Assembly: GCF_006345805.1 (NCBI RefSeq)
Contig: NC_043000.1
Span: 130,448,001 to 130,512,000, forward strand
Reading direction: 5' to 3'
Source: Octopus sinensis
Taxonomy: Eukaryota
Length of the DNA stretch: 64,000 nucleotides
Below the pieces are notes generated by a model. The model was not told where the DNA came from. It ran no database searches and saw only the letters and a list, made by a program, of their open reading frames with translations. Shown here in pieces: positions 6,401-52,899 of this stretch. Every line of letters starts with the position of its first letter. Positions within the stretch are counted from its first letter, which is position 1. The translations under genes were made by a program, and so were the position numbers.

Positions 6401-8770
6401 TTCAGCGTCTGTAAAAGGTCCTGCACCTCTAAAATTTCACCTTCATCACTGTCCAATTCAGCCACTTTATAAGCTTGACTGTTATTCAGAAAAATTGATA
6501 TAGGCTGGATACATAATCTTAATTGTGTTCTTTGCGGAAATCTCACGTTAAAACAATTAGTGTGATAATCTTTTTGTTCTCTCCGCAGCAAAAGACATCC
6601 ACATGACAATGTAGTGCAACCAATCATTTATTTCAATTAAATAAGCAGCGTTGACTCAATGAAATGTATTTTATTTGTTTTGATCGCCTATATGACAAAT
6701 AATGTATAACTGGCATATATTCAGACGATCCATGTGATCATACACCACGATGTCTTGGTTGTAAAAGTACATCAAACATAGCAGGTAAAGTGCTGATGAC
6801 GTTTCATTTACATTCAGGGAAAATGTTGACTAATTGGTGATGAGCGGAGCAAATACTCTCAAGCTACAAAATATTTGAAAAATAGTTATGAAAATAAAAC
6901 AAAAACTAAATATTTGGTACCATCTCAAAACCTATAGTGCAACTGAAAAACCAAATACTCATTTTGAATTAATATCGAACAGTGCGTGTTTTACTGAGAT
7001 AGAGTAATTGGTGGATAGAATTGGTACAATACCGAATAAGCTCTTCTATCTAATAATCCACCAAAGATAACATTTGTTCTTTGTTTATCTTTACAGGGTT
7101 GATGAAAAATTGGTATTTTTATCACTCTTACCAACTATAGCAGTCTTCAAAATTGGTGCTATTAGGCTTTTATTTGCAACTAATCATTCTTATACTCCAG
7201 TTTATTTAATTTTCATTATTCTATGCTCCAATATGTGTATACCAATCCGGCAGTGTAGATTCCACTTGTTAATCAAAGAAACATTGCATATCAGAAATGA
7301 TCCCATGTTTTCGAGAGTCAATAAAATATCTTCCTGTAGGTGCTGCGTTGGTTCAATGGAATATGTCTTCTATCTAAATTTTAACTTTGACCAGTGTCCA
7401 AGTATCAGGAAACAAGCATTGGAATTCCTCTCAGCATATACTGTACAGATCACAAAAAGCACAAGATGAACGGACACAGTGAATACAAATGGCAGATACA
7501 GAAATACAAGCTGCCCTGTAATCTGTACAGGGTGCTGGTAATCGAGTTCTATACTCTAGACTGTAAAGCGGAGTAAATGTGTGATATAGTAACACGTACA
7601 TTAGAAGTTTCACATCACTGATATTATTTTTTATATATAATTGCTGAGCTTTTTAAACAATTAGTTCTATGTTTCTCCTTAGACAAAATGGATTGTGCAC
7701 GGTTTCCGAAGAAGAATTCAATTACAGGCGTAGGTAGAGCCTGGATACTGCAAGGTTTTGTAGTATATTCAGTTTCCCACGGGGGCACAGCCGTCTATTA
7801 CAATATTCAAGTTTGTAATGAGGAGTTCCTGTCAACGATACGTTCATGTGACGGTTGGAAAGCTGTACGCTCCATCCAGAGATTTTGAGATAAAGCGGTA
7901 AATAAAAGAAGAGTTTTAATTGTTCCTACACCTGAATGATATCATTGGTTGCATAAACATTACCTTAAAATTATTGGCTATTGTGTCCGTGTAGTGTCTC
8001 GTTTTGGCATCAGATTTTGTGAGAATGGTTTTGTTGACCACAAACTTTTAGAAGCAGGAATCTTTCGGTGGCTAATTTGAAAAGTTTAGATTAATTAATA
8101 CAGCTATAATGTAATTCATGGATTATTGCCATGTTTCTAGTGTAACTAATTATAATTAGATAAATATGAATATACGCAGACATGTAGCTGAATTTCGGTC
8201 CTTACATATCCAAATAAAATTATAGAGACAATGCATTTAACCGAATAAGCAGTTTAAAATTACTTAAAAAAAGGGCTTCTAACATCAACGCTAACTTCGA
8301 TTTCTCTTTGACTTACGCCTTGTGACGAATTGAACTGATATTATTCATAAACCCAAAATAGCACAACTCCATAGATATATAAAAAGAAACCTATTTAGGC
8401 GCAAGAAAAATTTCACTAACACAAGCTCTAACTTAAATATTACACATCATACCTTCACTCCACTAATATGTCTGACTGAATACAAACAATGACAAACTTT
8501 ACCTATGAAAGCACTATTGCAAACCCCATCTCCCACACCACGATCTATAAACAGATATTTCCTCCTGCTCTACTCCAGTCTTTCACCCTACACAACTTCT
8601 TCCGTCCTCCTATACCAATTGTAATTCACATTAAATCACCTACCAAATGACACTGTCAAAATTTATATAATGCCAGAAAACCCAAAGTAAATCTCTGTCA
8701 ACATTTTCCTTGCAAATGTGTACTCTGCATAAGACTTTTGAGTGCGAAGGCATTTTAAGTGTGAACATAC

Positions 8771-14439: not shown

Positions 14440-16496
14440 GCAAGGAAAAATTGTAAAAATGCAGAATGCTAAATTGAAAGAAAATTTTAATGCAAATGGG
14501 TGTATGGAAAAAGTTTTTGAAAAATTGATAAAAAATATAAATATACATTAATTCAAACCGGTTTTCGTCATAATGTGACTTTTCAAGAATTGTAAAGGGA
14601 AAAAAGAAAATTATATTGTTTTTTGCCAAAAAATAATAATAAATATGTACAGAAATTAAAAAATAAGTACTCCGATACATTGTGAAGTCTTTGTGTATCT
14701 GGAGTTTAATGATTGTTCACGAAAAAATTACCTTGAAGTATTAGGATCCAATGGGATTAAAGCCATGTGTTGTTTAGTTTAATTAAGGGTGTTGGCAAAG
14801 CAGGAAGTAGTAGTAATTGTAGTTCTTCAGTTCCTGTGTTGTGAATAAGGGGAGACAACTCTATGGGTTTTGAGCTCTTCAATTTGTGTTTATCAATTTT
14901 TTGTGATAAAGGGTGTTAATAAACCTTAAATTATAAAATTATCATTTTAGCTTCATTTGCATTATCTTTTTTATATAATTGTTTGTTAACTTAACATTCA
15001 GATTTTAACACTTTATTTATATTATTTTCTAATTATGTAAGTTTGCATAAACCAATTTATAATTACATTTCAGATTGTTATGTCATATATAATAAAAATG
15101 ATAGTAATAATAACAACAATAATAATAATGATATTTAAAGAATATAAGTTTTAGCTTGAAGTGATGAATGCATGGTATCCTTATATATTTGTGTTAGTCC
15201 ATCCATGAAGAATGAGTTAGAAAAAGGAAGTATGATCAACGAAGAGTTTGCATATTAAGTTGCGTTTTGAATTTTTCAATAAAGAGATTCTCCTTGTTAA
15301 TTCTCTCCTGTGTGGTGATCCCGTCTTTACATTGGTAGAAGGGGAATATGTAGAATTTGGGATTTATGTCTTTAGCGCATGAGTCTATGTGGTCATTCAG
15401 TGGAATTTGTCGGTATTCCGGGAGATTTATTTGTTCTTTATGCACCGCTACTCGTTTACGTAACGGGAGACTCGTTTGCCCAACATAATTATGTTGGCAA
15501 CCAGAGCATGTGAGAACGTAGATAAGGTTTTCGGAGGAACAGGAGAAGTTAGTCTTGATTTTAAACTTCGTTCCTTGTTTGAAGATAAATTCAGAGCCTT
15601 CAGGTAGGAAGGGGCAGGTGCCACAGTTTGGGCGTGCACATTTTTTGACTGCTGGGGGTGGATGTGGTGTGTGAAGTTTGGCATTTGTCAAGAGTTTTTT
15701 TAAAGATTTGTGTTGCCTTTTACATTTGAGGATTTTGTGTTTATTTATAATGTTTTTCATTTTTGGGTCTGTTGACAGTAGACTGAGGTTTTGTATGATT
15801 GTGGTGTATGCTTCGATATTTTTGGGGTTGTGGGTGGAAAAGTATGGAAGTATTTTGGGGTTGTGTGTGGTGTTAGGTTGGGTGGTTTTCTGTGTAATGT
15901 TGTCTAGTTCTTTGGCGCGTTTTATTCCATACTCTATAAGGGTGGAGGGATATTGGCGTTGTAATAGCGTTTTTTATTTGAGGTCTTGAAGGCGTATTTC
16001 TCGTGTTTTTGGATCCGAGACAATGGTGCATACCCTTTTAGCTAAGTTGAAAGGGATATTTGTCTTGGTGTGTATTGGGTGGCATGAACTAAAGAGGAGG
16101 TATTGTTGTGAGTCTGTAGGTTTGTGGTAGATGTCTGTTATGATTTGGTTCTTAGGTGTTTTTATAATTAGGAGATCAAGGAAAGGGAGATGATGTTTGC
16201 TTAATTCCATAGTGAATTGGATGTTGGGATGTATGTTGTTCAGTATGGTTTTGAATTCCAGAAGTTTTTCATAAGGTTCTTTCCATATGATGAAACAATC
16301 ATCCAAATACCTTTTCCAGTTTTCCATTAGGTAGGTGTGGAAAACATGTCCAAATTTCTGGCGTGATATTTCATAGAGTGATAGTTCGAAGAAACCCATT
16401 ATGAGGTTCGAAAGGACTGATGCAGCCTTGGTACCCATCGCAATACCACATTTTCCTTCAATTTAGCATTCTGCATTTTTACAATTTTTCCTTGCT
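14439..16496 (-). mobile_element. 5'-truncated Penelope-like retroelement (Neptune-like): RT C-terminal half, GIY-YIG endonuclease and 3' UTR/pLTR
   Basis: RT motifs GIAMGTK, WKRYLDDCFIIW, LNNIHPNIQFT, LPFLD, DIYHKPTD (16438-15974). The 15760-15236 ORF has CARPNCGTC...NLIYVLTCSGCQHNYVGQT...RKRVAVH (GIY-YIG with Cys/His linker). The frame is broken between the two ORFs. (TA)n lies on both sides. Confidence 0.9.
14551..14590 (-). ncRNA. Minimal hammerhead ribozyme (PLE type) with U3-A8 core variant
   Basis: Sense RNA AUUC-UUGAAAA-GUCA(CAUUA)UGAC-GAA-AACCGGUU-U-GAAU: stem I AUUC/GAAU, stem II GUCA/UGAC, palindromic stem III AACCGGUU, cleavage triplet UUU. Confidence 0.7.
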
Positions 16497-25975: not shown

Positions 25976-27538
25976 AGGGAATGGAAAAGGTCAGTTTTCA
26001 TCCCAATACCAAAGAAAAGAGATACCAAGGACTGCACAAACTACCGTACCATCACCCTGATCCCCCATGTAAGCAAAATTCTCCTTAAAATCATCCAGAA
26101 GCGCATGGACACAACTATTGAGAGAGAATTGCTAGAGCTGCAAGTTGGCTTCATAAAGAGAAGAGGCACCCGCGATTACATCGCCAACCTACGGTAGATT
26201 ATGGAAAAGGCAAGAGAATACCAAAAGAAGCTGTACATGTGTTTCATCGATTACTCCAAAGCCTTTGACAGCATTGATCATGACAAATTATGGAAATGTC
26301 TGGAGGAAATGGGAACACCTTGTCCAGTTTATTAGATCACTCTATCAAAACCAAGAGGCTACAGTACGGGCACCATATGGCGACACTGATTAATTTGAGA
26401 TTGGAAAAGGCACTCGGCAAGGTTGCATCCTGTCACCAGCAGCCTTCAACATGTACGCTGAAAAAGTCATGAGGAATGCAGGCTTGGGGGATAGCAGCAT
26501 TGGAGTGAGGTTTGGAGGAAGAAATATTAATAATCTTCGCTATGCAGATGATACAACCCTGCTGGCGGAGAGTGGTAAGGATCTGGAGGATCTTGTCCTG
26601 CTGGAGAGTAAGAAATTTCGCTGTACCTCAATGTTAAGAAAACGAAGATCATGTCAACAGCAGCTACAACAAACATCAGCTTCATGATCGATAGTGAAGA
26701 GATCGAAGCGGTTGATGATTTCATCTCCCTTGGCTCCAAAATAAATCGAGATGGTGACTGCACTCCAGAAATAAGACGGCGGATAGTACTAGGCAGAGAG
26801 GCAATGGTCAGCATGAGCAGGGTCTGGAAGAGTAGAGACATCAGACTCGCTACCAAATGCAGATTGGTGAATGCAATTGTCTTCACAATAGCAACATATG
26901 AATACGAGACCTGGACACTAAAGAAAGCTGACCAAAAGAGAATTAATGCATTCGAGCTTTGGTGTTGGAGAAGACTTTTACGGATTCCATGGACAGCGAG
27001 GCTCACCAATGGAGAAGTTCTTAAGCAGATCAGGCCGAAACTGTCGGTAGAAGCTAGGATCACCAAGCATAGATTGGCATATTTTGGTCATATTATGCGG
27101 AGAAAATCCCTGGAGAAGGAGATCATGCTCGGAATGGTCAGTGGCAAGAGAGGAAGAGGCCGACCAAGAATCCGCTGGCTTGATACCATCAAGAGTGATA
27201 CCGGAATGGACATAGCCAATCTGAAAGAAGCGGCCCAGGATAGAACTGACTGGAGGACACTGATTCATTGACTAACCGAGAGTAGACATCGACAGAGCGG
27301 ATAGATACATACATACATACATACATACATACATACATACATACATACATACATACATACATACATACATACATACGACGGGCTTATTTCAGTTTCCACC
27401 TACCAAATCCACTCACTAGGCTTTGGTTGGCCCGAGGCTATGGTAGAAGACACCTGCCCAAGGTGCCAAGTAGTGGGACTGTACCCAGAAACATGTGGTT
27501 GGTAAGCACGCTACTTACCACGCAGTCATTCCTACGCC
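25685..27538 (-). mobile_element. Composite family A SINE (head 27375-27538, tail 25685-25868) split by an RTE LINE insertion
   Basis: Head and tail match the two halves of the intact copy at 41786-42190 in the correct order and strand. The RTE sits in the internal microsatellite. Confidence 0.75.
25974..27301 (+). mobile_element. 5'-truncated RTE-clade LINE (RT pseudogene)
   Basis: WKRSVFIPIPKKRDTKDCTNYRTITLI, FIDYSKAFDSIDH, GTRQGCILSP, NNLRYADD (26541-26552), ELWCWRRLLRIPWTAR, RGRGRPRIRWLD. There is a TAG at 26195-26197 where W is expected, plus frameshifts. It ends in (TACA)n, and the 5' end abuts (TA)n. Confidence 0.95.
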
Positions 27539-27854
27539 TATATTCTATATTTCTACAGCATGGGGAGAAGTCTTGATGAATCCAGTATATGTTTTCTCTA
27601 ACAAACTTTTCCCGTAGTTATTCAATGGAACACTTCCGCAATGATATATGCAGGAAATTATTTGTAAGCATTAGTTGAAACTCATGCACAGCAAAGTGTG
27701 ATCACGTCTTTGTATTTTGGTGTATTTCAGTTGATAGACAACCTAATAACATATAATCGCCAATGAGAATTTGTATGTGTTCAACATTTTGTTGACGTTT
27801 TAATAACGGAATAGAGATAGTCTCAACCTGACTTATTAAAATCTACTTACTCAG

Positions 27855-27856
27855 TC

Positions 27857-27935
<79 letters not shown>

Positions 27936-27936
27936 T

Positions 27937-27976
<40 letters not shown>

Positions 27977-27990
27977 TGATAGATAGATAT

Positions 27991-28032
<42 letters not shown>

Positions 28033-28060
28033 GGGTAGATAGATATAGACATACATATTA

Positions 28061-28091
<31 letters not shown>

Positions 28092-28556
28092 GAGTGTGTG
28101 TGTATATATATACATATATATATATACCATATATATAAATATATATATATATATATAAATATATATATATACACACACACATATATATATATACATACAT
28201 ACTTGCATATATATATACATGTTTGTGTGTGTTCGCGTGTATGTGTGTGTATATGTATATGTATATGCATATGTATGTATATGTATGTATATATGTGTTT
28301 GTGTATGTGTATGTGGAACACTTTTCTGGTAATTTCTGAAGTATCCGAGAATTTTATTCTAATGAATGCTTTAGAAAACTCCAGTTAATCTCTAGGTAAA
28401 TTAATAAACTTAAAATGATGAAAAATATTGTTGAAAGATATGACAGGAAAGAAAAATATTCGTGACATATAACTGAATTAAGTGAAGTGATTCAATATTT
28501 GACTTTGTATGATCGTATTATCAATAGCGACAAACACACGCACGCACACACACACA

Positions 28557-28600
<44 letters not shown>

Positions 28601-28948
28601 ACACAAAGACACACACACACACACAGACACACACACACACAAAGACACACACACACGCACACATGCACACATAAAATCCACGTATACAATTATGTGGATG
28701 TGTATATATACTTCAATAACAAGTATATGTATACATGTTTGTGAATCTCTCTCTCTCTCTCTCTCTCTGTATATATATATATATATAATATATATATATA
28801 TAGACATATTCATACTACATACATCCCCGACTTCTGATGCTATGTATATATATATATATATATATAGATTTCTACACGCTAGGCCACTGGAAGTGAAAAT
28901 GTCTATTAATTTCCATTTCCATTCGATATGATTAAGTATATATAATAT

Positions 28949-28982
<34 letters not shown>
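27855..28982. repeat. Large compound microsatellite field (TA, GA, TAGA, CA)
   Basis: Direct inspection. Confidence 0.9.
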
Positions 28983-31562
28983 AGATGGCTCATTTTCTTC
29001 CACGAGAACGTAGATCTAAAATCGAACCGGACAACAGCATCGTCCGAATACGGCCGGCTTTTTAAAACATTGGATACGCCGCCACCTAACCCAAGACTGA
29101 AGAAGTTTGAGGACGACTTGTGGGACATAGTTAGAAAGATTAAGTTCAGGAAGTCACCCAGGAGAAATGCCCACCTCAGATACCTAGATAAAATTACCAA
29201 GGACATTAATAGAACGGACGGAGTCCTGGTCCAGTCCGACAAGACCAGGAACACATACAAGATGCCCATTAAGCAGTACCTAGATTTACTCGGTAAAGAG
29301 ATCAAGAAAAATTATAGAAAAACCAATTGGAGTATCCTGAGGAAGGTAAACTTGGAAATTAAGGAAATAATATTTAAACACCGAATTCAAATGAGAACTC
29401 AGCCGCTTAGCCCTAAGCAACCCAGATTTATAGTGAAGGACCATAAACCGAACTTCCACACCAACCCAGCGCTAAGACTCATATGCCCCGCTAGATCTGA
29501 TATCGGGATAATCAGTAAGTACATTTTAGATAAATATATCCCTAGTTTAGTAAACAAGCTGAAGCTCAGCCTCTGGGCCAACTCCTCGCAGGTAGTGAAG
29601 TGGTTCTCTTCCATCCCCAATAAGAACCGTACTAGGTTCATTCAGTTTGATATCGCCAGCTTCTACCCCTCGATTAACCCTAGTGTGCTAAATAAGGCCC
29701 TCTGGCATGCTCACAACAAGGCTGGCCTCACCAGAGAAGAGATAGATATCATTTTAGTTGCCAGGAAATCGTTTATTAAGTTCGATAATAAGTTGTGGAT
29801 CCGTAAAGATACTCCCAATGAATTTGATGTGCCTATGGGTAGTTCGGATAGTGCGCAGATAGCCGATTTGGTCGGAATATATATTCTCTACGAATTGTCC
29901 GACCAATTCCCGGAGATCGCGGGCGGCCTGTATCGTGACGATTGTCTGTTTTACCTGCAAAACACCACGAACAGAATAGTGCAGAAAACTAAGAGCAGGT
30001 TAGCTAGGTTTTTTAATAGAATGGGCATGAGTATAGTTTTTGATAATGAACTCACCAAGGCTAATTTCCTAGATGTTACACTTAACCTTAATAGCGACTC
30101 ATACTGCCCTTACCATAAGCCTTCCACTAATTTGAAGTATGTCAGTGTTTTCTCAAATCATGCCAAAACCGTAACAGACAATTTGGTTAAAAACAACTCT
30201 CTAAGATTGTCTGGCTTGTCCGCCAGTGCCGATATTTTTATGCAGAAAGCGGAATTTTATAACGCCGCACTATCCAAGGCCGGTTATAGGCAGAAGGTAA
30301 TTTATATTGATCCGGCCCTTCCGATGCCATCATTCGGTCATCAGGATAGGGCCGTATATAACAACATTAACATTTTAAGTAAGGACGGGAGCGCGGCGGA
30401 TGCCGGGGTAGTCGATCCCGCATTTAATTTAGCGAACAAGGATAATTATCGGTCCGGGAGGTCTCACACTAACCCAAGACCCGTTATTCATCCGAGAATC
30501 ACCCACCCGAACGCGAGAGCTGGCGTCCCGACCCATCACACTGATAGGAATAAGCATATATGGTTTGTAATCCCCTTTGGTAAGCAGATTAGAACTAACC
30601 TCCCCCTCATGTTTAGACAAGCCATCGCCAATAACTTCCCCAGAAATTCCAAATATTACTCCACGGTTAACTCGCATAAAGTTAGGATAGCTTTCTCCAA
30701 CACTAAAAACCTCGCCCAGATAATCGCCTCCCATAATAATAGGCTACTTACTAAGACCCTATCACCTTTTTCCGGAGGCACAGCCTCTTCCGCTCCCGGT
30801 TTAATGCTCAGTAGGAATAATTATAGTAGTAATAATGATATGAGAGCCAGTACAGTGACACATAATCTCAGCTCCAGCCAGGGAGTACCCACTAGGGGTA
30901 TAGTTATAAATAGGGGTGTCGTGGTTGACGGTAACAATGGGAGTAGGGTAGAGAGCCCCAATAGCATCCCCAGCATCATTTCCCGCAATAGCAGCACCAC
31001 GGGCAGTAGCAATGACAGCACTCTGATAGATAGTGGAGAATCAGGGGTTATTCCTATAGTTAATAGTGATGTAGTAGAAAATAGAGTAGTAAGCGGCTGC
31101 AGGTCTCGGAACGAATATAGTGACAGGAACGCAGTTCTAATTTCAGAAACTAATCCTAGCAGAATAAGATTCACGTCAGCGAACTCCAAGATCAAAAACG
31201 CCGTCTACCAATGCAAGGTTTACACGGACTCAGATGTCTTCACTTATGTAGGGGCCTCATCCTCAAGATTGTCTTTGCGTGTCTCCAACCATTACGCAAC
31301 TTTTCGGGACATGAACAAGCGCCAGACCACGGGACTCAGTAAGCTAATATGGCGACTGAAGGATACGAACTTAAGCTACAGGCTGGAATGGTCAATTTTG
31401 TCGGTGGCCCTCCCATTTGATAGGGGCAGAAGGCAGTGCAACCTTTGTGTCTCCGAACTCTTCCATATTTTGTTTGCCAGAGGCCGGATGGTAACCGGGC
31501 TTTTACAGTCGGCTTTTCGATGCCCCCATTGGCGGCGTTACACTTATCTGGCCTTTAAATAG
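28983..31562 (+). CDS. PLE polyprotein: reverse transcriptase plus C-terminal GIY-YIG endonuclease (frame open from 28983; the annotated TTG start at 29070 is not a real start)
   Basis: RWLIFFHEN (N-terminal PLE motif), QSDKTRNTY, KDHKPNF..RLICPARSDIGIISKYILD, FDIASFYPSI, DVPMGSSDSAQIADLVG, YRDD (29931-29942), FLDVTLNL, PYHKP, IWFVIPFGK, SHNNRLL, AVYQCKV...TYVG....RVSNH, CNLCVSE, CPH. No stop until TAG 31560-31562. Confidence 0.9.
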   Translation, partial: RWLIFFHENVDLKSNRTTASSEYGRLFKTLDTPPPNPRLKKFEDDLWDIVRKIKFRKSPRRNAHLRYLDKITKDINRTDGVLVQSDKTRNTYKMPIKQYLDLLGKEIKKNYRKTNWSILRKVNLEIKEIIFKHRIQMRTQPLSPKQPRFIVKDHKPNFHTNPALRLICPARSDIGIISKYILDKYIPSLVNKLKLSLWANSSQVVKWFSSIPNKNRTRFIQFDIASFYPSINPSVLNKALWHAHNKAGLTREEIDIILVARKSFIKFDNKLWIRKDTPNEFDVPMGSSDSAQIADLVGIYILYELSDQFPEIAGGLYRDDCLFYLQNTTNRIVQKTKSRLARFFNRMGMSIVFDNELTKANFLDVTLNLNSDSYCPYHKPSTNLKYVSVFSNHAKTVTDNLVKNNSLRLSGLSASADIFMQKAEFYNAALSKAGYRQKVIYIDPALPMPSFGHQDRAVYNNINILSKDGSAADAGVVDPAFNLANKDNYRSGRSHTNPRPVIHPRITHPNARAGVPTHHTDRNKHIWFVIPFGKQIRTNLPLMFRQAIANNFPRNSKYYSTVNSHKVRIAFSNTKNLAQIIASHNNRLLTKTLSPFSGGTASSAPGLMLSRNNYSSNNDMRASTVTHNLSSSQGVPTRGIVINRGVVVDGNNGSRVESPNSIPSIISRNSSTTGSSNDSTLIDSGESGVIPIVNSDVVENRVVSGCRSRNEYSDRNAVLISETNPSRIRFTSANSKIKNAVYQCKVYTDSDVFTYVGASSSRLSLRVSNHYATFRDMNKRQTTGLSKLIWRLKDTNLSYRLEWSILSVALPFDRGRRQCNLCVSELFHILFARGRMVTGLLQSAFRCPHWRRYTYLAFK

Positions 31563-32164
31563 CGTTTATAAATAATACCGGCACCCATAGCCCTTGGTAA
31601 CAAATTCTGAAATAGCCTTTAAGATATCTACGATTGACCACTGCAAGGGGAATTACTCCTGTAAGACAAACGGGGCTTGGTTTTTTCACAGCGGGGGGTT
31701 TCCTTGACAAGGTAGGCTTAGATGAACACACACACACATAAAACATAATATATATATATAATTTTTTTATTTTTTTCTTTCTGCCACCCAACGGTTCTCG
31801 CGGCAGTAGCCACTGACAGCCGAACGATCAAACGCACACACGTACACAAAAAATGTTTTCTACCCCTACGCCAACACACACATATATAGAACAGTATACA
31901 CACACACACGTCTCTAAGTAGATTTTTTCTCGCCCCTTATAAAACATCTAATATTCCTTAAATAGTCAGAACTTTATTCTCGGTCACAAAGAACACCCAC
32001 ACACCCTCACCCACATGATTGACCGATGCCTGACCCGTTAAATTCTTCAGCCACCGGTTCTCAACATACACTGATAAACAGTTTCGCCATGGGCTCTTAG
32101 GAGCATAGTTCGATTTGTTTTTGCTCCGCCTCTGTTCTGTTTTTGTTTTTCCAACGGATTTCCT

Positions 32165-32256
32165 ATTTTCTTTCTGAAGAGAAAGACACAATATGGTCCC
32201 ATTATTCAATCGGATTTTGGTAATTTGTGCCTTTCGAAACACGTGTAGAATGAAAT
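32165..32256 (+). ncRNA. Hammerhead ribozyme with palindromic stem III and extended stem II
   Basis: CUGAAGA (32174-32180); stem II GAAAGACACAA...UUGUGCCUUUC (32181-32235); GAA then ACACGUGU (32239-32246); A17 at 32247 (GUA triplet); stem I AUUUUCUUU pairs with GAAUGAAAU (one mismatch, two G-U). Confidence 0.8.
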
Positions 32257-32466
32257 AAAACGATTTCTGTTCAATCTGCGTTCAGCTCCATTTCTTCAAT
32301 TCACCAATAATGTTTTAATTTCAATTATCCGCACCAACGCACGGTTGCAACACCATATGGTTGTACCTCCAACCGTGCTGTTTACTGCTGTGATTTTTGC
32401 TACTAAGGTATCGGTTAAACTTTTGATTAATCTACTACAAGATTATTCATCTTTCTATTTCACATA

Positions 32467-32507
<41 letters not shown>

Positions 32508-32510
32508 CAC

Positions 32511-32576
<66 letters not shown>

Positions 32577-32577
<1 letters not shown>

Positions 32578-32912
32578 GTATAAAGGATCGTGGGTAAAGC
32601 CAAAGCAATGCGAAGCAAATGCAAGGTAAATCAAAAGAAAGCAAATATGTGAATTGATGCATACTTACTTTGTATTCAATATTCCGGGATTATGACCCCA
32701 TTTTGAAGAAAATGACGATTGTTGCCGATGTGCGCGTTTGTGAGTTCACACACACTCACATCGGCAAGAAGTGTCAATTTCGGGAAAACGGGGTTATAAC
32801 ACAGAAATATTGAATACAAGTTAAGTCTACATTAATTCACATATTTGTTTTCTTGTGATTTACCTTGCATTTACTTCGCATTGTTTTCGCCTTACCCACA
32901 ATATTTTATACA
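32577..32912. mobile_element. Fold-back element / MITE-like palindrome (~336 bp)
   Basis: The left half is an imperfect reverse complement of the right half along its whole length, e.g. CAATGCGAAGCAAATGCAAGGTAAATC vs GATTTACCTTGCATTTACTTCGCATTG. The core is TTGCCGATGTG...CACATCGGCAA. Confidence 0.8.
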
Positions 32913-33124
32913 ATATATTCAACACACTGCTTCATAGTAATTATATATACACCTATACATATAAATTTGACATGGGCGATTCTTTCTTGTATATTTTCTT
33001 GTCTTGAGATTCACGGTCAAACGGCTGGGTTGAATTGCACGAAAAATTACACAGATGTGTAGAATGATCAGCTAGTGTTGCTGGGCGTTGTATTTTTTCA
33101 CAGCTCTCGTGGTTACCGAGATAA

Positions 33125-33690
33125 TCTACTATAATAATACTCTTGTATTTATGAATGAGAAAGGAAGGGGTGATAGATGAATAAGAAAGGAAGGGTTGAT
33201 GTATGACTTGGTAGTGGGATGATGAAAATTGTACGGTGAAAAAATAAATCAAACAGCGTTTCAACTCTGTGTATTTGGTATTTACTTACCAGCTCTTGCA
33301 TTTATTCACATTTATGTGGCCTGAAGTCGGATAAAAAGGAAGGAAATTTTTTTAATTCTTTTGAAGGAAACAGGCAGTCAAAGGATGTTAGTTGACGATA
33401 ACTAAAAACTTGGTTTTGTACCTTATCTACTATAATAATATTCTTGTGTTTTTCTCCCTCACAACATATAAATGAGAAAGGAAGTAGTGATGGCAAACTT
33501 CGTAATGGTATGATGGAAACTGTACGCTGAAAAAGATAAATAAAACCTGAAAATTCTGTTAAAGGAAACAAGCAGTCAAAGGATGTTAATTGCGGGTAGA
33601 TTTTTCACAAAACAATTTAGTAATAAATGTACCTTATTTATATATAAAATACTACAATCAGCCGTCATCTTCGACGGCACGGGGACCTGC

Positions 33691-33693
<3 letters not shown>
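33125..33693 (+). mobile_element. Non-autonomous Helitron with duplicated 5' unit
   Basis: A|TCTACTATAATAATA 5' ends at 33125 and 33426. 3' hairpin GCCGTC-ATCTTC-GACGGC (33661-33678), then CTAG|T ending at 33693. Confidence 0.75.
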
Positions 33694-33731
<38 letters not shown>

Positions 33732-34004
33732 AGTAAATGTGATAAGTCGAATTGCACAGAATATTAAATAGATTTAATAGAAAAAAAATGTACATCTGTA
33801 TGGATATAAAATAGTCCGACTTACAGAATATAAATGATATCAGGAGTTAAATGAGTAGAGTTTTACGAGTCGAACAGCTGATTTTGGGAGCTTGGTGGTC
33901 TAGAGTAATGATAGTTACTTGAATCCATTATCAGATAACACCGCCCCCTTCTTCAGGGGAGAATTTTACATTTGAGGTGTTGACAGGAGGAATGCATATG
34001 TATA

Positions 34005-46456: not shown

Positions 46457-47207
46457 TACAGACAGACAGAAAGACAGACAGGCATATTAGTATGCCAGAT
46501 GGTTTAGGTTAAAGAACATTTTTCGATTGCTCTGTATCTTAATTTGCAGATATATTTAGACAGGGAAGTAGGCGTAATTCTTTCTCTGGATGTGTAGGAA
46601 TGTACGTGCTGCATATATCTAATCGCAATTCCATTATCCTTAAGTCTCGTGTAACCTCTTCCTGTATGGTCAGCATGATTTATAGTTACTCTGTACGCCA
46701 TACACCATATGTTGTATATTTATCATATTTTCGCTTCCTTTGTATTTCACAAATTCATGGCAGCAAATTTCTGTGGCGATGCCTCAGCTGTGTTTTGAAC
46801 CATGACTCTCCGAATTCTCCTTGTCAGCACTCCGACAATTTATACCATCATATTAGGGTTTAATTACTACGCGACCGTGGCTCGACCGATCAGTATTGGC
46901 TGGCTTGTTATGGTTGATGCATTGAATTCACAACAGGTGTGCGAGTTTTTCCGCAAAATAGACTGATCATTATGGAAAAACTGACGGATCCAACCTAACA
47001 ACAGAGCAACCAGATATCCAAGCAGAACTGCATAGTTTTGCTCAGTGAAGTGGTCTCTCACCCTCTTCCACATTTTCTTACGTAACATGCTTAGATCGTA
47101 TCTGTCAAAATGTACCAACTTTGATTTGTAGTGTCTAATTACTTATATATTGCTTAGATGCAGCAGTTTTAACTCTACTTATTTCGTTTTCAGTACTATT
47201 ATACAGC

Positions 47208-51406: not shown

Positions 51407-52899
51407 GTTAATCCAAACATGAAAACACAAAAAACACAACAACGCGAGGACGTGGAACAATTATAGTGTTATTGGACGCTCAGGAAAGGAAAGAAAGAAG
51501 GAGGATTTAACGTTATATATATGTATATATATGCAAGTATACACACTGACGCAGGCGCATACACACACACACACCATACACATTGGTTATAATGGTGTCA
51601 GCTATAAAAACAAAAGTAAGTTGTGAAAATGTAAGTTCATTATGAGTGAATAAAATATTAAGTTATCACTTGATTTAAATAAGGTTGAGTATAACGAATT
51701 AAGATAACATGAAACTAAATTAAGTAAAATAAATGGATACATTATATGAAGTAAATATATTAATTTTATTTAACAAATGTTTAATATGTAATATATTAAT
51801 TATAAAGCTAGGGGATAAGTGGAAATATAGGTGGTCGCTATAAGAATTAAGTGCTACATAACGAGTGAAGAGAGAAGAATAATATAAAATAAAATAAAAG
51901 AAGGTAAATGTGTTAATTTAATTAAATAAGCTTTTTTGGGTATCACAACTATGTTTAAGGGAGAGTAATGTGTAAGAAAATTAATTATGCAGAGAGATTT
52001 GTCTTAATGCATCTAGATTTCTCTTGAAATTGAAAGGTCTTAAAATATTTAGGAACACAATAGGAGAACGCTTTATGTTGTTTGTTTGATAATTGTGTTA
52101 GGTTATGAGATATTAGTGTAACGAAACAGTTTAACCCTGGTATAGAGGACCCGAATCGATAATGAATCATGTTATATCGAATGATTTATTGTTTTCTGTA
52201 AGGTTGTGCATGAGGTCGACTCGAGAAGTAGCGTTACTGCCTTTCATATTTGAAAGACCTCAAATGAGCTGAGTATCGTTTCTTAAAATTTACAGTTGCT
52301 TTAATGTAAACCAAACCCTGGTTGAGTATTGCTGGTTATCTAGGACCGAGCACTTATATATTACGTTAAATCTTCAGCAGTTGCTTTGTAATGATACCTA
52401 TTAAGGACTTTGAGATCGCAACTGGAGTTATTTCTATTTGATAGATTATTATTGGTGATGATAAAAATCTATAATGGATTTAGTTTGGTCCGTATGATTC
52501 CTCTTCGCTGTAAAGTACAGGAATGTTACGCATGTATACATAAATCAGAAATTTTATTTCAAAAATCAATGAATTGGATATATAAAATAATAGCTTCTCA
52601 AGAATCGCCATACATCAAGTATTTTATATAGTCACGGTGCCAATGCATGCCTTAACCACAGACCATTCTCCTTTTCAGGAAGTTTACTTCTGCCTGATAT
52701 ATTTACTAGCAACATTGTAAAATCTCCTTTAATTGCATATTTCTTTCTATAAAAATGATAGACGACGTGTATTGGAAACCGTTACTTTTTTTCTGTCTAT
52801 CTAATCGGTGCGGAAATGATGGTGCTCATCTCTAGTTGCAACATCTATAGAGATCAGTGTGTGTAGGAAACTGGGTGTGGTGAAAACCTATTCTTTTGC

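What the first reader, a model, noticed from the sequence alone, without database searches (positions are those of the whole stretch)
28983..31562. Uninterrupted Naiad-like Penelope polyprotein with two long disordered insertions replacing the usual linker
Seen: about 860 stop-free codons in a window where every other retroelement is broken. RT (YRDD) and GIY-YIG motifs are intact. There is a ~78-aa Pro/His/Asn insert (~30312-30545) and a ~115-aa Ser/Asn/Gly/Val insert (~30750-31095). Established knowledge, from memory: PLEs of this motif type normally have only short linkers after the RT thumb and after the SHN motif, followed by a CxCR..CP...C knuckle. Here only GCR remains (31095-31103). 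Inference: a recently active or selectively maintained, structurally novel PLE subfamily. The second insert's DNA is rich in AGT/AAT/AGC triplets and may be an old microsatellite that became coding.
Basis: partly seen in the sequence, partly recalled or inferred. Interest (0 to 1): 0.8.

Follow-up and report, generated by a model that had tools for sequence, protein, structure and literature searches.

The report
Octopus Hydra-clade Penelope retrotransposon, truncated copy
This is a young, 5'-truncated copy of a Penelope-like retrotransposon of the "Hydra" clade (not Naiad) from an octopus-type genome; its lineage carries two long disordered linkers and has lost a zinc knuckle, yet it still lands in (TA)n repeats.

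Summary
Window 28983-31562 (+) is an 859-codon stop-free frame, the longest in the window (876 vs 277 codons stop to stop). It has an intact YRDD and GIY-YIG core and two in-frame insertions predicted to be disordered. The clade call is wrong. Naiads have an N-terminal endonuclease. This protein has the diagnostic motifs of the C-terminal-EN Hydra clade (Craig et al. 2021): RW(K), DKT, no CCHH, CxxC..E and CxH. It also has (TA)n at both ends and a type I hammerhead in the 3' UTR. The copy starts at profile position 35, has no start codon and abuts (TA)24, so it cannot be autonomous. The inserts are not private. Octopus sinensis copies share both, and a third octopus lineage has even longer ones. 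Between the window copy and an O. sinensis copy, dS is about 1 while omega is 0.06 (RT), 0.13 (SHN block), about 0.05-0.19 (EN) and 0.44 (inserts). So the lineage stayed active with the inserts, and they evolve as weakly constrained spacers. The CxCX5C knuckle is lost in both copies. A microsatellite origin for insert 2 is not supported. Verdict: derived variant of a known clade, moderate interest.

The parts
28937..28982 (.). (TA)24 microsatellite abutting the 5' end of the copy (target or junction)
   Evidence: Tandem Repeats Finder; junction sequence. Only 3.35% of window positions lie within 10 nt of a (TA)>=6 run.
28980..32466 (+). The whole retrotransposon copy as present here: 5'-truncated, ORF plus 3' UTR, about 3.49 kb
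   Evidence: blastn and tblastn to the O. sinensis locus L003 start at 28980/28983. The conserved 3' block ends at the (TA)n run at 32466/32467.
28983..31562 (+). Single RT-EN open reading frame, 859 codons plus stop. No start codon; the first in-frame ATG is aa 94 (nt 29262), downstream of DKT
28983..29636 (+). Pre-RT N-terminal region. It begins at the RWK-motif position (RWL here, 28983-28991). DKT motif at 29238-29246
   Evidence: Alignment A1; HMM match from profile position 35; coordinates; motif definitions from PMC8557442 section 11
29637..30314 (+). RT core and thumb/HTH region: RT3(A) FIQFDIASFYPSI 29637-29675, divergent RT4(B) 29823-29876, YRDD within 29925-29948, FLD 30063-30083, SNHAK 30153-30167
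   Evidence: AF2 pLDDT above 90. Foldseek top hits are telomerase RTs, E=8e-9. omega 0.06.
30315..30545 (+). Insert 1: disordered Ala/Pro/Asn/Arg-rich linker, about 66 residues more than the family median
   Evidence: HMM gap 30315-30530; pLDDT below 50 at aa 452-521, nt 30336-30545; same length with no gaps in the O. sinensis copy, 49% aa identity, omega 0.61 [0.29-1.23]
30546..30758 (+). 'SHN' block: small folded alpha/beta module (HIWFVIPF ... RIAFSN ... IIASHNNRLL)
   Evidence: HMM block 30531-30758; pLDDT 73-94; omega 0.13. The lineage-specific substitutions WFVIPF and RIAFSN are shared with O. sinensis.
30759..31184 (+). Insert 2: disordered Ser/Asn/Val/Gly-rich linker, about 120 extra residues. 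It contains the dead knuckle (SGCRSRNE, 31092-31115) and a block conserved within the lineage (NAVLISETNPSRIRF, 31128-31172)
   Evidence: HMM gap; pLDDT below 50 at aa 598-728; 0 in-frame stops against 15 and 26 in the other two frames, with 8.2 expected; shared with the O. sinensis copy, 39% aa identity, omega 0.35 [0.17-0.57]
31185..31559 (+). C-terminal GIY-YIG-type endonuclease: AVY, YVG, R, H, CNLC..E and RCPH kept. The conserved Asn is Thr in this copy (aa 838, ACC, nt 31494-31496)
   Evidence: AF2 domain model pLDDT 87. Top structural neighbours are T4 EndoII, Hpy188I and I-TevI, below significance. omega bootstrap range 0.05-0.19.
31563..32466 (+). 3' UTR. The first ~600 nt cannot be aligned with the octopus copy; the last ~300 nt (32160-32466) are conserved at 74% identity
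32164..32257 (+). Type I hammerhead ribozyme motif: helix I 32164-32173/32248-32257, CUGAAGA 32174-32180, long helix II 32181-32235, GAAA 32236-32239, helix III plus palindromic loop CACGUG 32240-32245, predicted cleavage after A32247
   Evidence: One motif match in 64 kb against 0.04 expected. Same motif at the homologous site of L003, with loop AUAU. The MFE fold has the hammerhead topology. Three double-sided compensatory pairs; 82% of cells paired in register against 41-52% when slid. Rfam Hammerhead_1 is the best hit on the short stretch: full model, 17.1 bits, below the gathering score of 34.
32467..32575 (.). (TA)~54 microsatellite at the 3' end of the copy (target or tail)

Best explanation
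What it is. The region is one copy of a Penelope-like retrotransposon (PLE). By descent it belongs to the C-terminal-endonuclease 'Hydra' clade, in a lineage so far seen only in octopods.

How a full unit is built. As seen in Octopus sinensis, the unit is about 3.6 kb: a short 5' UTR, one ORF (N-terminal RW(K)/DKT region, telomerase-like RT, a small 'SHN' module, a GIY-YIG endonuclease), and a ~0.9-kb 3' UTR with a type I hammerhead ribozyme.

How it most likely works (inferred from what is known of PLEs). The endonuclease nicks (TA)n DNA. The RT copies the element RNA by target-primed reverse transcription that starts internally near the 3' end. Incomplete copying gives 5'-truncated insertions.

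The window copy. It is such an insertion. It sits between two (TA)n runs, starts at the RW motif, and lacks the first ~35 codons, the ATG and the 5' UTR. It also has Thr in place of the conserved endonuclease Asn. It therefore cannot be autonomous. Its frame is uninterrupted because it is young, not because this locus is under selection.

The two long linkers. They are features of the lineage, not of this copy. They lie at the two points of the protein where length varies across the whole family. They are predicted to be disordered, evolve several times faster than the domains, and behave as tolerated, weakly constrained spacers.

The zinc knuckle. The CxCX5C knuckle that normally precedes the endonuclease was lost before the window copy and the O. 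sinensis copy diverged. RT and EN stayed under strong purifying selection afterwards, and copies still sit in (TA)n.
For: SHOWN

Homology:
- 438 relatives, best E=2e-119.
- 8002 cluster representatives at E<=1e-3.

Hydra-clade motifs (definitions from PMC8557442):
- RMRWKA, ADKT, CNCRxKxxC, RCxLCLTEK and CxH are in the family consensus.
- RWL, DKT, CNLC..E and RCPH are in the window copy.

Folds:
- Telomerase RTs are the best structural matches.
- GIY-YIG nucleases are the top-ranked neighbours of the EN model.

Element ends and truncation:
- (TA)n lies at both ends here and at the L003 junctions. Only 3.4-5.3% of positions are that close to a (TA)n run by chance.
- The window copy starts at profile position 35. 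The O. sinensis copies start at MELFEINASLKDIPIPP, 35 codons upstream.
- L003 holds two copies head to tail.

Hammerhead.

Inserts are shared:
- P0135/L003 is collinear through both inserts.
- L005 has linkers of about 150 and 125 aa in a 785-codon open frame.
- P0185 from O. bimaculoides also has a long linker 1.

Selection:
- omega is 0.06 (RT), 0.13 (SHN block), 0.05-0.19 (EN) and 0.44 (inserts), with dS about 1.
- The window copy's own branch has 54 synonymous and 28 nonsynonymous changes.

Age: P(no stop) falls below 0.05 once post-insertion neutral divergence exceeds 3%, or 0.8% if indels are counted.

Disorder: pLDDT below 50 only in the two inserts.

Knuckle: absent in both the window copy and L003; 3 of 4 Cys kept in L005.

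INFERRED
Nicking at (TA)n, target-primed reverse transcription with internal initiation, and the role of the hammerhead come from PMC11167929, PMC4209133 and PMC8557442. None was tested here.
Against: - No RT tree against reference PLE clades could be built, because no Repbase references were available. Clade placement rests on diagnostic motifs and on homology to proteins that carry them.
- One diagnostic Hydra feature (CxCX5C) is absent. The unit is also longer than the '<3 kb' typical of the clade.
- Pfam RVT_1 and GIY-YIG barely detect the family (1 and 5 of 66 members).
- The EN fold matches are below significance (best E=0.09).
- The hammerhead is below Rfam's gathering score (17 against 34 bits). 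It is supported by only two homologous sequences, and the O. sinensis copy has a G-G mismatch at positions 10.1-11.1.
- No pseudo-LTR is present in the window itself.
- The source species of the window was not identified. Copy number and the age distribution in that genome are unknown.
- The 5' loss could be a later (TA)n-mediated deletion rather than truncation at insertion. A 14-nt tail-like match lies upstream of the (TA)24.
Confidence: 0.8

Rival explanations
1. One reading: a Naiad-like PLE subfamily whose usual short linkers were replaced by two novel disordered insertions.
For: It is a PLE, and the linkers are much longer than the family medians.
Against: Naiads are defined by an N-terminal GIY-YIG EN, a CxC motif between EN and RT, DKA, and no canonical hammerhead (PMC8557442). 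Here the EN is C-terminal, the motif is DKT, there is no CxC domain upstream of the RT, and a hammerhead is present. In cephalopods, Naiads are reported only as ancient remnants.
Confidence: 0.02
2. The inserts are private expansions, or frameshift artefacts, in a dead copy. The open frame would then be a compositional accident.
For: The copy lacks a start codon and has the poorest retention of family-conserved residues in the SHN block (10 of 20). Insert 1 alone has only 3 expected stops per frame.
Against: Both inserts are collinear in O. sinensis copies at a different locus, and a third lineage has them too. No homology is hidden in other frames. Insert 2 has 0 in-frame stops against 15 and 26 out of frame. 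The 'odd' substitutions are shared with the sister copy. The window copy's own branch is dominated by synonymous change.
Confidence: 0.02
3. A domesticated, host-maintained gene derived from a PLE. The frame would be kept open at this locus by host-level selection.
For: Long intact frame, omega well below 1. NCBI annotates related octopus fragments as genes, named 'myb-like protein I' and 'GATA zinc finger domain-containing protein 4-like/14-like'.
Against: There is no start codon, and the first ATG lies after DKT. The copy keeps the transposon's 3' UTR with hammerhead and sits between (TA)n runs. Paralogues at other loci are broken or independently truncated. omega was measured between paralogous transposon copies, so it reflects selection on transposition. 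The NCBI names are artefacts of low-complexity sequence.
Confidence: 0.04
4. A knuckle-less lineage that is partly defective and is mobilised in trans by co-resident Hydra-type PLEs that still have the knuckle (such as the L005 lineage). It would ride on their (TA)n targeting.
For: The knuckle is lost in both window and L003 copies. This copy also has Thr at the conserved Asn. A lineage with 3 of 4 knuckle cysteines and an open frame coexists in O. sinensis. The conserved 3'-terminal ~300 nt with hammerhead could be the shared recognition module.
Against: EN (omega about 0.05-0.19) and RT (0.06) remained under strong purifying selection after the knuckle loss. That is not expected if the lineage's own proteins were dispensable. 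The 3' blocks of the window copy and L005 share no detectable DNA similarity.
Confidence: 0.12

Closest known systems
Hydra clade of C-terminal EN+ Penelope-like elements (Craig, Yushenova, Rodriguez & Arkhipova 2021, PMC8557442)
   Same: Single ORF with a C-terminal GIY-YIG EN. RW(K) and DKT motifs, divergent RT4(B), no CCHH, CxxC and CxH around the conserved E. (TA)n insertion sites. Hammerhead near the 3' end. Reported from aquatic invertebrates, including Mollusca.
   Different: The CxCX5C knuckle is lost (1 of 4 Cys here, 0 of 4 in the O. sinensis sister copy). Both linkers are expanded to 95 and 154 aa against medians of 29 and 34. The unit is about 3.6 kb rather than under 3 kb. The hammerhead has an unusually long helix II (55 nt between CUGANGA and GAAA). 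RWK is RWL. This copy has Thr at the conserved Asn.
Octopus sinensis XP_029650703.1 'myb-like protein I' and its locus (CM016882.1, L003)
   Same: Same lineage: 74% aa identity over 699 residues and 77% nt identity. Both inserts are collinear. Same SNHAK, WFVIPF and RIAFSN substitutions, same knuckle loss, homologous hammerhead, (TA)n junctions.
   Different: That copy keeps the 5' end (ATG, MELFEINASLKDIPIPP) and the conserved Asn. It has an in-frame stop, a one-codon deletion and a frameshift before the EN. It is followed head to tail by a second partial copy.
Naiad (N-terminal EN+ PLE clade)
   Same: A PLE with a telomerase-like RT plus a GIY-YIG EN. Microsatellite, often (TA)n, insertion bias. 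Frequent 5' truncation.
   Different: Permuted domain order (EN at the N-terminus), a CxC motif, DKA, usually an IFD, CCHH present, no canonical hammerhead. None of these fits the window element.
Penelope/Poseidon clade
   Same: C-terminal GIY-YIG EN without an upstream Zn-finger linker. Hammerhead with a short palindromic helix III.
   Different: Penelope/Poseidon have DKG, GxKF/Y and the internal CCHH motif, which this family lacks. Here the missing knuckle is a secondary loss within a knuckle-bearing clade.

Membership tests
Penelope-like elements (general) | Telomerase-like reverse transcriptase | tested here: met
   The AF2 model (pLDDT above 90 over the RT) has TERT structures as best Foldseek hits (6zdq_A E=8e-9, 3du5_A), ahead of DRT, group II intron and retron RTs. 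YRDD is intact. Pfam RVT_1 does not detect it.
Penelope-like elements (general) | GIY-YIG endonuclease fused to the RT | tested here: inconclusive
   The GIY/YIG/R/H/E motifs align with the family. Pfam GIY-YIG gives weak hits in 5 of 66 relatives. The top structural neighbours are T4 EndoII, Hpy188I and I-TevI, but the best E is 0.09. All lines agree; no single test is significant.
Penelope-like elements (general) | Hammerhead ribozyme motif near the 3' end or in the pLTR | tested here: met
   Type I core with a 1-bp helix III and a palindromic loop at 32164-32257. One match against 0.04 expected; conserved in L003. Rfam Hammerhead_1 is the top hit but below its gathering score. Criteria from PMC4209133. 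Cleavage was not tested.
Penelope-like elements (general) | Partial tandem or pseudo-LTR arrangement, 5' truncation, 30-40 bp 'tail' | tested here: inconclusive
   5' truncation: yes. There is no pLTR or second copy in the window. L003 shows a head-to-tail pair, and its 5' UTR repeats 13 nt of the 3' end. The tail-like 14-mer upstream of the window's (TA)24 is only suggestive.
Hydra clade (PLE) | C-terminal EN; no CxC domain between EN and RT | tested here: met
   Block order is RT, then SHN, then EN in one frame.
Hydra clade (PLE) | RWK motif in place of GxKF/Y; DKT in place of DKG | tested here: met
   The family consensus has RMRWKA and ADKT. The window copy has RWL (28983-28991) and SDKTRN (29235-29252). 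K is replaced by L in this lineage.
Hydra clade (PLE) | [quoted passage not shown] | tested here: met
   CNLCVSE (in 31434-31463) and RCPH (31518-31529) are present. The invariant columns in A5 are C91, C94, E97, C119 and H121. The conserved Asn is Thr in this copy but Asn in L003 and L005.
Hydra clade (PLE) | Linker with a CxCX5C zinc-finger-like motif upstream of GIY | tested here: not met
   The window has SGCRSRNE..RF..S, so 1 of 4 Cys remains. L003 has no Cys. Relatives have CNCRxKxxCPLxGxCL, and L005 has 3 of 4 Cys. This is a secondary loss within the clade, which is why I call it a derived variant and not a typical member.
Hydra clade (PLE) | Insertion into (TA)n | tested here: met
   (TA)24 and (TA)54 abut the two ends here. 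(TA)n also lies at the L003 copy 1 5' end and at the copy 1/copy 2 junction. Background is 3.4-5.3% of positions.
Hydra clade (PLE) | Short unit (generally under 3 kb) | tested here: not met
   The truncated copy is already 3.49 kb, and the full unit in L003 is about 3.6 kb. The excess comes from about 0.55 kb of inserts and a 0.9-kb 3' UTR.
Hydra clade (PLE) | RT groups with Hydra reference families in a phylogeny | not testable with these tools
   No Repbase or Craig et al. reference sequences were available. The paper's supplement is not held.
Naiad clade (PLE) | N-terminal GIY-YIG EN linked to the RT by a CxC motif; DKA | tested here: not met
   The EN is C-terminal, there is no EN or CxC upstream of the RT in full-length relatives or in L003, and the motif is DKT.
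Naiad clade (PLE) | Insertion-in-fingers domain between RT3(A) and RT4(B) | not tested
   The A-to-B spacing is about 60 aa, but I had no reference PLE alignment to compare it with.
Naiad clade (PLE) | No canonical hammerhead | tested here: not met
   A hammerhead core with all three helices is present.

The most novel reading that the evidence does not exclude
In this octopod lineage of Hydra-clade PLEs, (TA)n targeting does not depend on the CxCX5C zinc knuckle. The knuckle was lost, yet RT and EN stayed under strong purifying selection and copies kept landing in (TA)n. Target choice would then lie elsewhere. Candidates are the EN core with its CxxC/CxH motifs, the lineage-specific block NAVLISE(T/A)NP(S/N)RIRF that replaced the knuckle, or pairing of a (UA)n-ending template with nicked (TA)n DNA. 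The expanded disordered linkers may be what makes this re-wiring tolerable. This would be a natural loss-of-function test of the proposed link between the linker Zn-finger and microsatellite targeting in PLEs.
Probability: 0.3. Interest if true: 0.55.

Novelty: new variant of a known kind. Interest (0 to 1): 0.36.

Why it matters
- **Clade assignment.** The report moves the finding from Naiad to Hydra. It shows the Hydra clade has diversified in octopods into at least three lineages with open or nearly open frames, while Naiads are only relics in cephalopods.
- **Targeting hypothesis.** Craig et al. proposed that the linker Zn-finger mediates microsatellite targeting. A lineage that lost the knuckle but keeps (TA)n junctions and selected RT/EN makes that idea directly testable.
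- **Protein evolution.** Two inter-domain points of a retrotransposon polyprotein tolerate more than 100 residues of fast-evolving, low-complexity disorder. This is a useful case of linker expansion in an AT-rich, microsatellite-prone genome.
- **Annotation.** Octopus RefSeq proteins named 'myb-like protein I' and 'GATA zinc finger domain-containing protein 4-like/14-like' are fragments of this transposon's ORF, named after their Asn-rich inserts.
- **Ribozyme detection.** The hammerhead has a helix II long enough to escape Rfam's threshold and the usual descriptors, so such variants may be under-counted.

Tried and rejected
- **Pfam and NCBIfam on the ORF:** no RT or GIY-YIG hit. Pfam on 66 relatives gave only weak hits.
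- **PDB sequence searches** with the protein and with a family profile: nothing useful.
- **Frameshift hypothesis for the inserts:** a six-frame HMM scan found no off-frame homology. Alternative frames at the knuckle and the C-terminus are full of stops.
- **Neutral decay as the cause of the poor motif retention:** rejected. The changes are shared with L003, the window branch is mainly synonymous, and 6-7% neutral divergence would give P(no stop) of about 1e-3.
- **Rfam on the whole window and on 27200-33800:** no hammerhead, only microsatellite-driven miRNA false positives. The motif was found by eye and by pattern. It appeared as Rfam's top hit only when the short stretch was searched alone.
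- **Rfam on the closest non-octopus contigs L001 and L002:** nothing. Little or no 3' UTR is present there.
- **Microsatellite origin of insert 2:** Tandem Repeats Finder at minimum score 30 finds one 15-nt repeat of 2.1 copies.
- **Host identification** through the neighbouring RTE/BovB-like ORF: the distribution is too broad to be informative.
- **Other copies in the window:** none by blastn or tblastn.
- **Palindrome at 32571-32918:** unrelated to the element.
- **Supplement of Craig et al.:** not held, so I could not check whether octopus Hydra families are already listed.
- **Covariation statistics for the hammerhead:** not significant with two sequences, 70 of 500 shuffles.


Full report
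**1. The observation**

Window 28983-31562 (+) is 859 sense codons followed by a stop. Counted stop to stop the run is 876 codons, because the upstream (TA)n also reads open. The next longest run in any of the six frames of the 64-kb window is 277 codons. The other two sense frames of the same DNA contain 60 and 106 stops. YRDD lies at nt 29931-29942, and GIY-YIG-like motifs lie at 31197-31463.

I built a profile HMM from 114 relatives of about 700 aa and scanned all six frames of the window. It matches three collinear blocks in a single frame: 28977-30314, 30531-30758 and 31185-31535. Nothing matches in other frames inside the gaps. The two inserts are therefore real in-frame insertions. Measured between fixed profile positions, linker 1 is 95 aa against a family median of 29. 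Linker 2 is 154 aa against a median of 34. AlphaFold2, run with a 66-sequence alignment, gives mean pLDDT 77.8 and pTM 0.75. It places 504 residues at pLDDT 90 or above. Only two long segments fall below 50: aa 452-521 (nt 30336-30545) and aa 598-728 (nt 30774-31166). The one adjustment is that insert 2 runs about 70-90 nt further than stated.

**2. Which element it is**

Pfam and NCBIfam do not recognise the protein, so I used homology searches. There are 438 hits, the best at E=2e-119 and 30-44% identity. An exhaustive scan finds 8002 cluster representatives at E<=1e-3. The family consensus reads: M..YS.KNIPIP...RMRWKA.FF; ADKT.N; FDI..FYPSI; FDVTMGS.DGAE; GLYRDDGL; NFLDVTL; SNHPP; IIWFNPP...SYSC...HN.K.L; CNCRxKxxCPLxGxCL; VVY...YIGLT..FK.RY..H; RCxLCLTEK; LNKR.EL.S.C.H.

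Craig et al. 2021 (PMC8557442) define Naiad by an N-terminal EN, a CxC motif, DKA, usually an IFD, and no canonical hammerhead. They define a separate C-terminal-EN clade, Hydra. Its features are an RWK motif, DKT, a divergent RT4(B), no CCHH, a CxCX5C linker, CxxC and CxH flanking the conserved E and N, short single-ORF units, hammerheads, and (TA)n insertion sites. The family found here matches the Hydra description motif for motif and does not match Naiad.

Structure gives independent support. The best Foldseek matches of the model are telomerase RTs (E=8e-9), ahead of DRT, group II intron and retron RTs. This fits the known sister relationship of PLE RTs and TERT. A separate model of the C-terminal domain (pLDDT 87) has T4 EndoII, R.Hpy188I and I-TevI as its top-ranked neighbours. 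All three are GIY-YIG nucleases, but their scores are below significance (best E=0.09). I could not build an RT tree because no reference PLE sequences were available.

**3. Boundaries and state of this copy**

A (TA)24 run (28937-28982) touches the first codon, and a (TA)~54 run starts at 32467. The closest relative is a locus on Octopus sinensis chromosome CM016882.1, held here as L003. It contains a copy with 74% aa identity over 699 residues and 77% nt identity. In that copy the ORF begins 35 codons further upstream, at MELFEINASLKDIPIPP...RIRWL, after a short 5' UTR. That 5' UTR is itself preceded by (TA)n. The window copy is cut exactly at '...AGATGGCTC'. It therefore lacks the ATG, the first ~35 codons and the 5' UTR. 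Its first in-frame ATG is aa 94, downstream of the DKT motif.

About 600 nt downstream of the stop, a ~300-nt block (32160-32466) is 74% identical to the corresponding part of L003, and in both it ends in (TA)n. The copy as present here therefore spans 28980-32466. In L003 a second, partial copy follows the first head to tail across a (TA)n run. This arrangement is typical of PLEs. Only 3.4% of window positions and 5.3% of L003 positions lie within 10 nt of a (TA)>=6 run, so the repeated junctions with (TA)n are not chance.

**4. Hammerhead**

Rfam found nothing at gathering threshold, nor at E<=10 over 6.6 kb. Reading the conserved 3' block, I saw CUGAAGAG...CUUUCGAAAC-ACGU-GUA. I then searched with a pattern for CUGANGA, 8-90 nt, GAAA, a 1-bp helix III with a palindromic tetraloop, and UH. 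It matches once in the window (32174-32247, sense strand), against 0.04 matches expected from shuffles. It also matches once at the homologous position of L003, where the loop is AUAU.

The unconstrained MFE fold has the hammerhead topology. Between the two copies there are three double-sided compensatory changes. In the proposed register 82% of cells are paired, against 41-52% when the register is slid. With two sequences the shuffle control is not significant, at 70 of 500. When the 141-nt stretch is searched alone, Rfam's Hammerhead_1 is the top hit over the full model, with a 51-nt insertion in helix II. It scores 17.1 bits against a gathering score of 34. The short palindromic helix III, the large helix II and the G10.1-C11.1 pair are the features Cervera and de la Pena describe for metazoan and PLE hammerheads that act as dimers (PMC4209133). 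Cleavage was not tested.

**5. Are the inserts private?**

No. A search with only the insert-bearing half returned one protein among 5.8 billion: XP_029650703.1, 'myb-like protein I' of O. sinensis. It aligns through insert 1 without a gap and through insert 2 with small gaps. It also shares the unusual substitutions SNHAK, WFVIPF and RIAFSN. These made the window copy look degenerate against the whole family, where it keeps 10 of 20 conserved SHN-block residues and 1 of 6 knuckle residues.

Further octopus fragments have long Asn-rich insertions at linker 1. They are annotated 'GATA zinc finger domain-containing protein 4-like' (O. bimaculoides) and '14-like' (O. sinensis). The locus of the latter, L005, holds a third lineage at about 39% identity. 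It is also 5'-truncated. It has a 785-codon open frame, linkers of about 150 and 125 aa, 3 of 4 knuckle cysteines (CNFRNKNKCVFGNQCL) and the conserved Asn. Outside octopods, several relatives also have long linkers at the same two sites: P0054 74 aa, P0001 65 aa, and P0062 127 aa, the last with a duplicated knuckle. Both sites are therefore hot spots for length variation across the family. The octopod lineages are the extreme, and linker expansion preceded the knuckle loss.

**6. Selection and age**

Results for the window copy against L003 copy 1, by the Nei-Gojobori method with bootstrap:

| Region | aa identity | dN | dS | omega [95% bootstrap] |
|---|---|---|---|---|
| RT | 0.88 | 0.058 | 0.93 | 0.06 [0.04-0.09] |
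| SHN block | 0.80 | 0.104 | 0.78 | 0.13 [0.05-0.29] |
| EN | 0.68 | 0.212 | saturated | range 0.05-0.19 |
| Insert 1 | 0.49 | 0.370 | 0.61 | 0.61 [0.29-1.23] |
| Insert 2 | 0.39 | 0.492 | 1.41 | 0.35 [0.17-0.57] |
| All domains | 0.83 | 0.091 | 1.08 | 0.08 [0.06-0.11] |
| All inserts | 0.42 | 0.447 | 1.02 | 0.44 [0.28-0.65] |

The two copies are separated by near-saturating synonymous divergence. That divergence accrued under strong purifying selection on the RT and EN, so it happened in transposing lineages. The inserts persisted throughout and evolved about five times faster at the protein level.

Using L003 copy 2 as outgroup, the window copy's own branch has 54 synonymous and 28 nonsynonymous changes. 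Its private replacements at conserved sites are few and conservative. 3.8% of possible point substitutions in this ORF create a stop. The absence of any stop therefore bounds post-insertion neutral divergence at about 3% at the 5% level, or about 0.8% if indels are counted at 10% of substitutions. The copy is young, and its unusual features were inherited from its source element.

One difference may be private. The conserved EN Asn, which is N in L003, L005 and the family, is Thr here (ACC, 31494-31496).

**7. Knuckle**

The window copy has SGCRSRNE...RF...S where relatives have CNCRxKxECPLxGxCL. Both copies instead share a block, NAVLISE(T/A)NP(S/N)RIRF, just before the GIY strand. The loss predates their split, and the EN stayed under purifying selection afterwards. 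The lineage therefore evidently transposed without the knuckle while keeping (TA)n junctions. [quoted passage not shown] An alternative is mobilisation in trans by lineages that still have the knuckle. I rate this lower because of the low omega of the EN.

**8. Origin of the inserts**

Its GC3 of 0.42 is lower than that of the domains, at 0.53-0.60. Tandem Repeats Finder detects only one 15-nt repeat of 2.1 copies, even at minimum score 30. A slippage origin is plausible for low-complexity Asn/Ser tracts in this microsatellite-rich genome, but the DNA no longer shows it. I leave that unproven.

**9. Mechanism, with the inferred parts marked**

- Shown here: the anatomy, the flanks, the shared inserts, the selection pattern, the predicted disorder and the hammerhead motif.
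- Inferred from the literature on PLEs (PMC8557442, PMC11167929, PMC4209133): the GIY-YIG EN nicks the target, and the RT performs target-primed reverse transcription that initiates internally near the 3' end of the RNA. The hammerhead may process multimeric transcripts. 5' truncation results from incomplete reverse transcription.
- Unresolved: the loss of the 5' end in this copy could instead be a later (TA)n-associated deletion. A 14-nt match to the 5' UTR/tail motif of L003 lies upstream of the (TA)24.

**10. Verdict**

The element is a derived octopod variant of the known Hydra clade, not a Naiad. The window copy is a young, dead-on-arrival, 5'-truncated insertion. The host species was not identified. 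An octopod is inferred from the closest relatives. Interest is moderate. The knuckle-independent (TA)n association and the heritable disordered linkers are the points worth following up.

Noticed in passing
window 32571-32918: Near-perfect hairpin palindrome (173-nt arms, 82% complementary, 2-nt spacer) immediately 3' of the (TA)n that ends the PLE. It has no similarity to the PLE and no other copy in the window. It may be a foldback or MITE-like element.
   Followed up: partly
window ~15236-16438 (-): A second, broken PLE-type remnant from a different family. Two ORF pieces (15236-15760, 15974-16438); weak Pfam GIY-YIG hit (E=3.5e-4); family HMM E=8.5e-8 over profile positions 346-636.
   Followed up: partly
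window 7889-8071 (-), 46498-46701 (-), 52137-52406 (-): Very weak matches (E=3e-4 to 7e-3) of the EN part of the family HMM. They may be further decayed GIY-YIG/PLE fragments, or chance.
   Followed up: no
window 26612-27271 (+): RTE/BovB-type non-LTR RT C-terminal fragment (219 open codons). The best database hit is 80% identical. The family is too widely distributed to reveal the host.
   Followed up: yes
L005 9029-9132 (+) (O. sinensis CM016888.1): Hammerhead-like motif with the same unusual architecture as the window's: CUGAAGAG, an 85-nt helix II region, CGAAAC-AGCU-GUC. It lies 2.1 kb downstream of the stop of the L005 PLE copy. Rfam does not recognise it, and it is unclear whether it belongs to that copy.
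   Followed up: partly
O. sinensis XP_029650703.1 and XP_029653623.1; O. bimaculoides XP_014779971.1: RefSeq models named 'myb-like protein I' and 'GATA zinc finger domain-containing protein 14-like/4-like' are fragments of this PLE's ORF. The names evidently come from the Asn/Ser-rich inserts.
   Followed up: yes
window 28909-28922: ATTTCCATTTCCAT, just upstream of the (TA)24, matches the L003 copy 1 5' UTR motif ATTTCCATTTCAAT (0 of 300 shuffles score as high). That motif in turn repeats 13 nt of the L003 element's 3' end. It may be a PLE 'tail' or the remnant of a deleted 5' region.
   Followed up: partly
window 27301-28982: A dense block of microsatellites upstream of the element: (ATAC)19, (AT)~177 with (AG)n and (GATA)n, (AC)~71, (TC)n and several (TA)n runs. 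It produces many sub-threshold miRNA false positives in Rfam.
   Followed up: no
P0062 (ENA contig, L002): A non-octopus relative whose long linker 2 contains a tandem duplication of the knuckle (KRCNCGNPHESLIAGSCL followed by KGCNCRNPLECPLAGSCL). This shows one way this linker grows.
   Followed up: no
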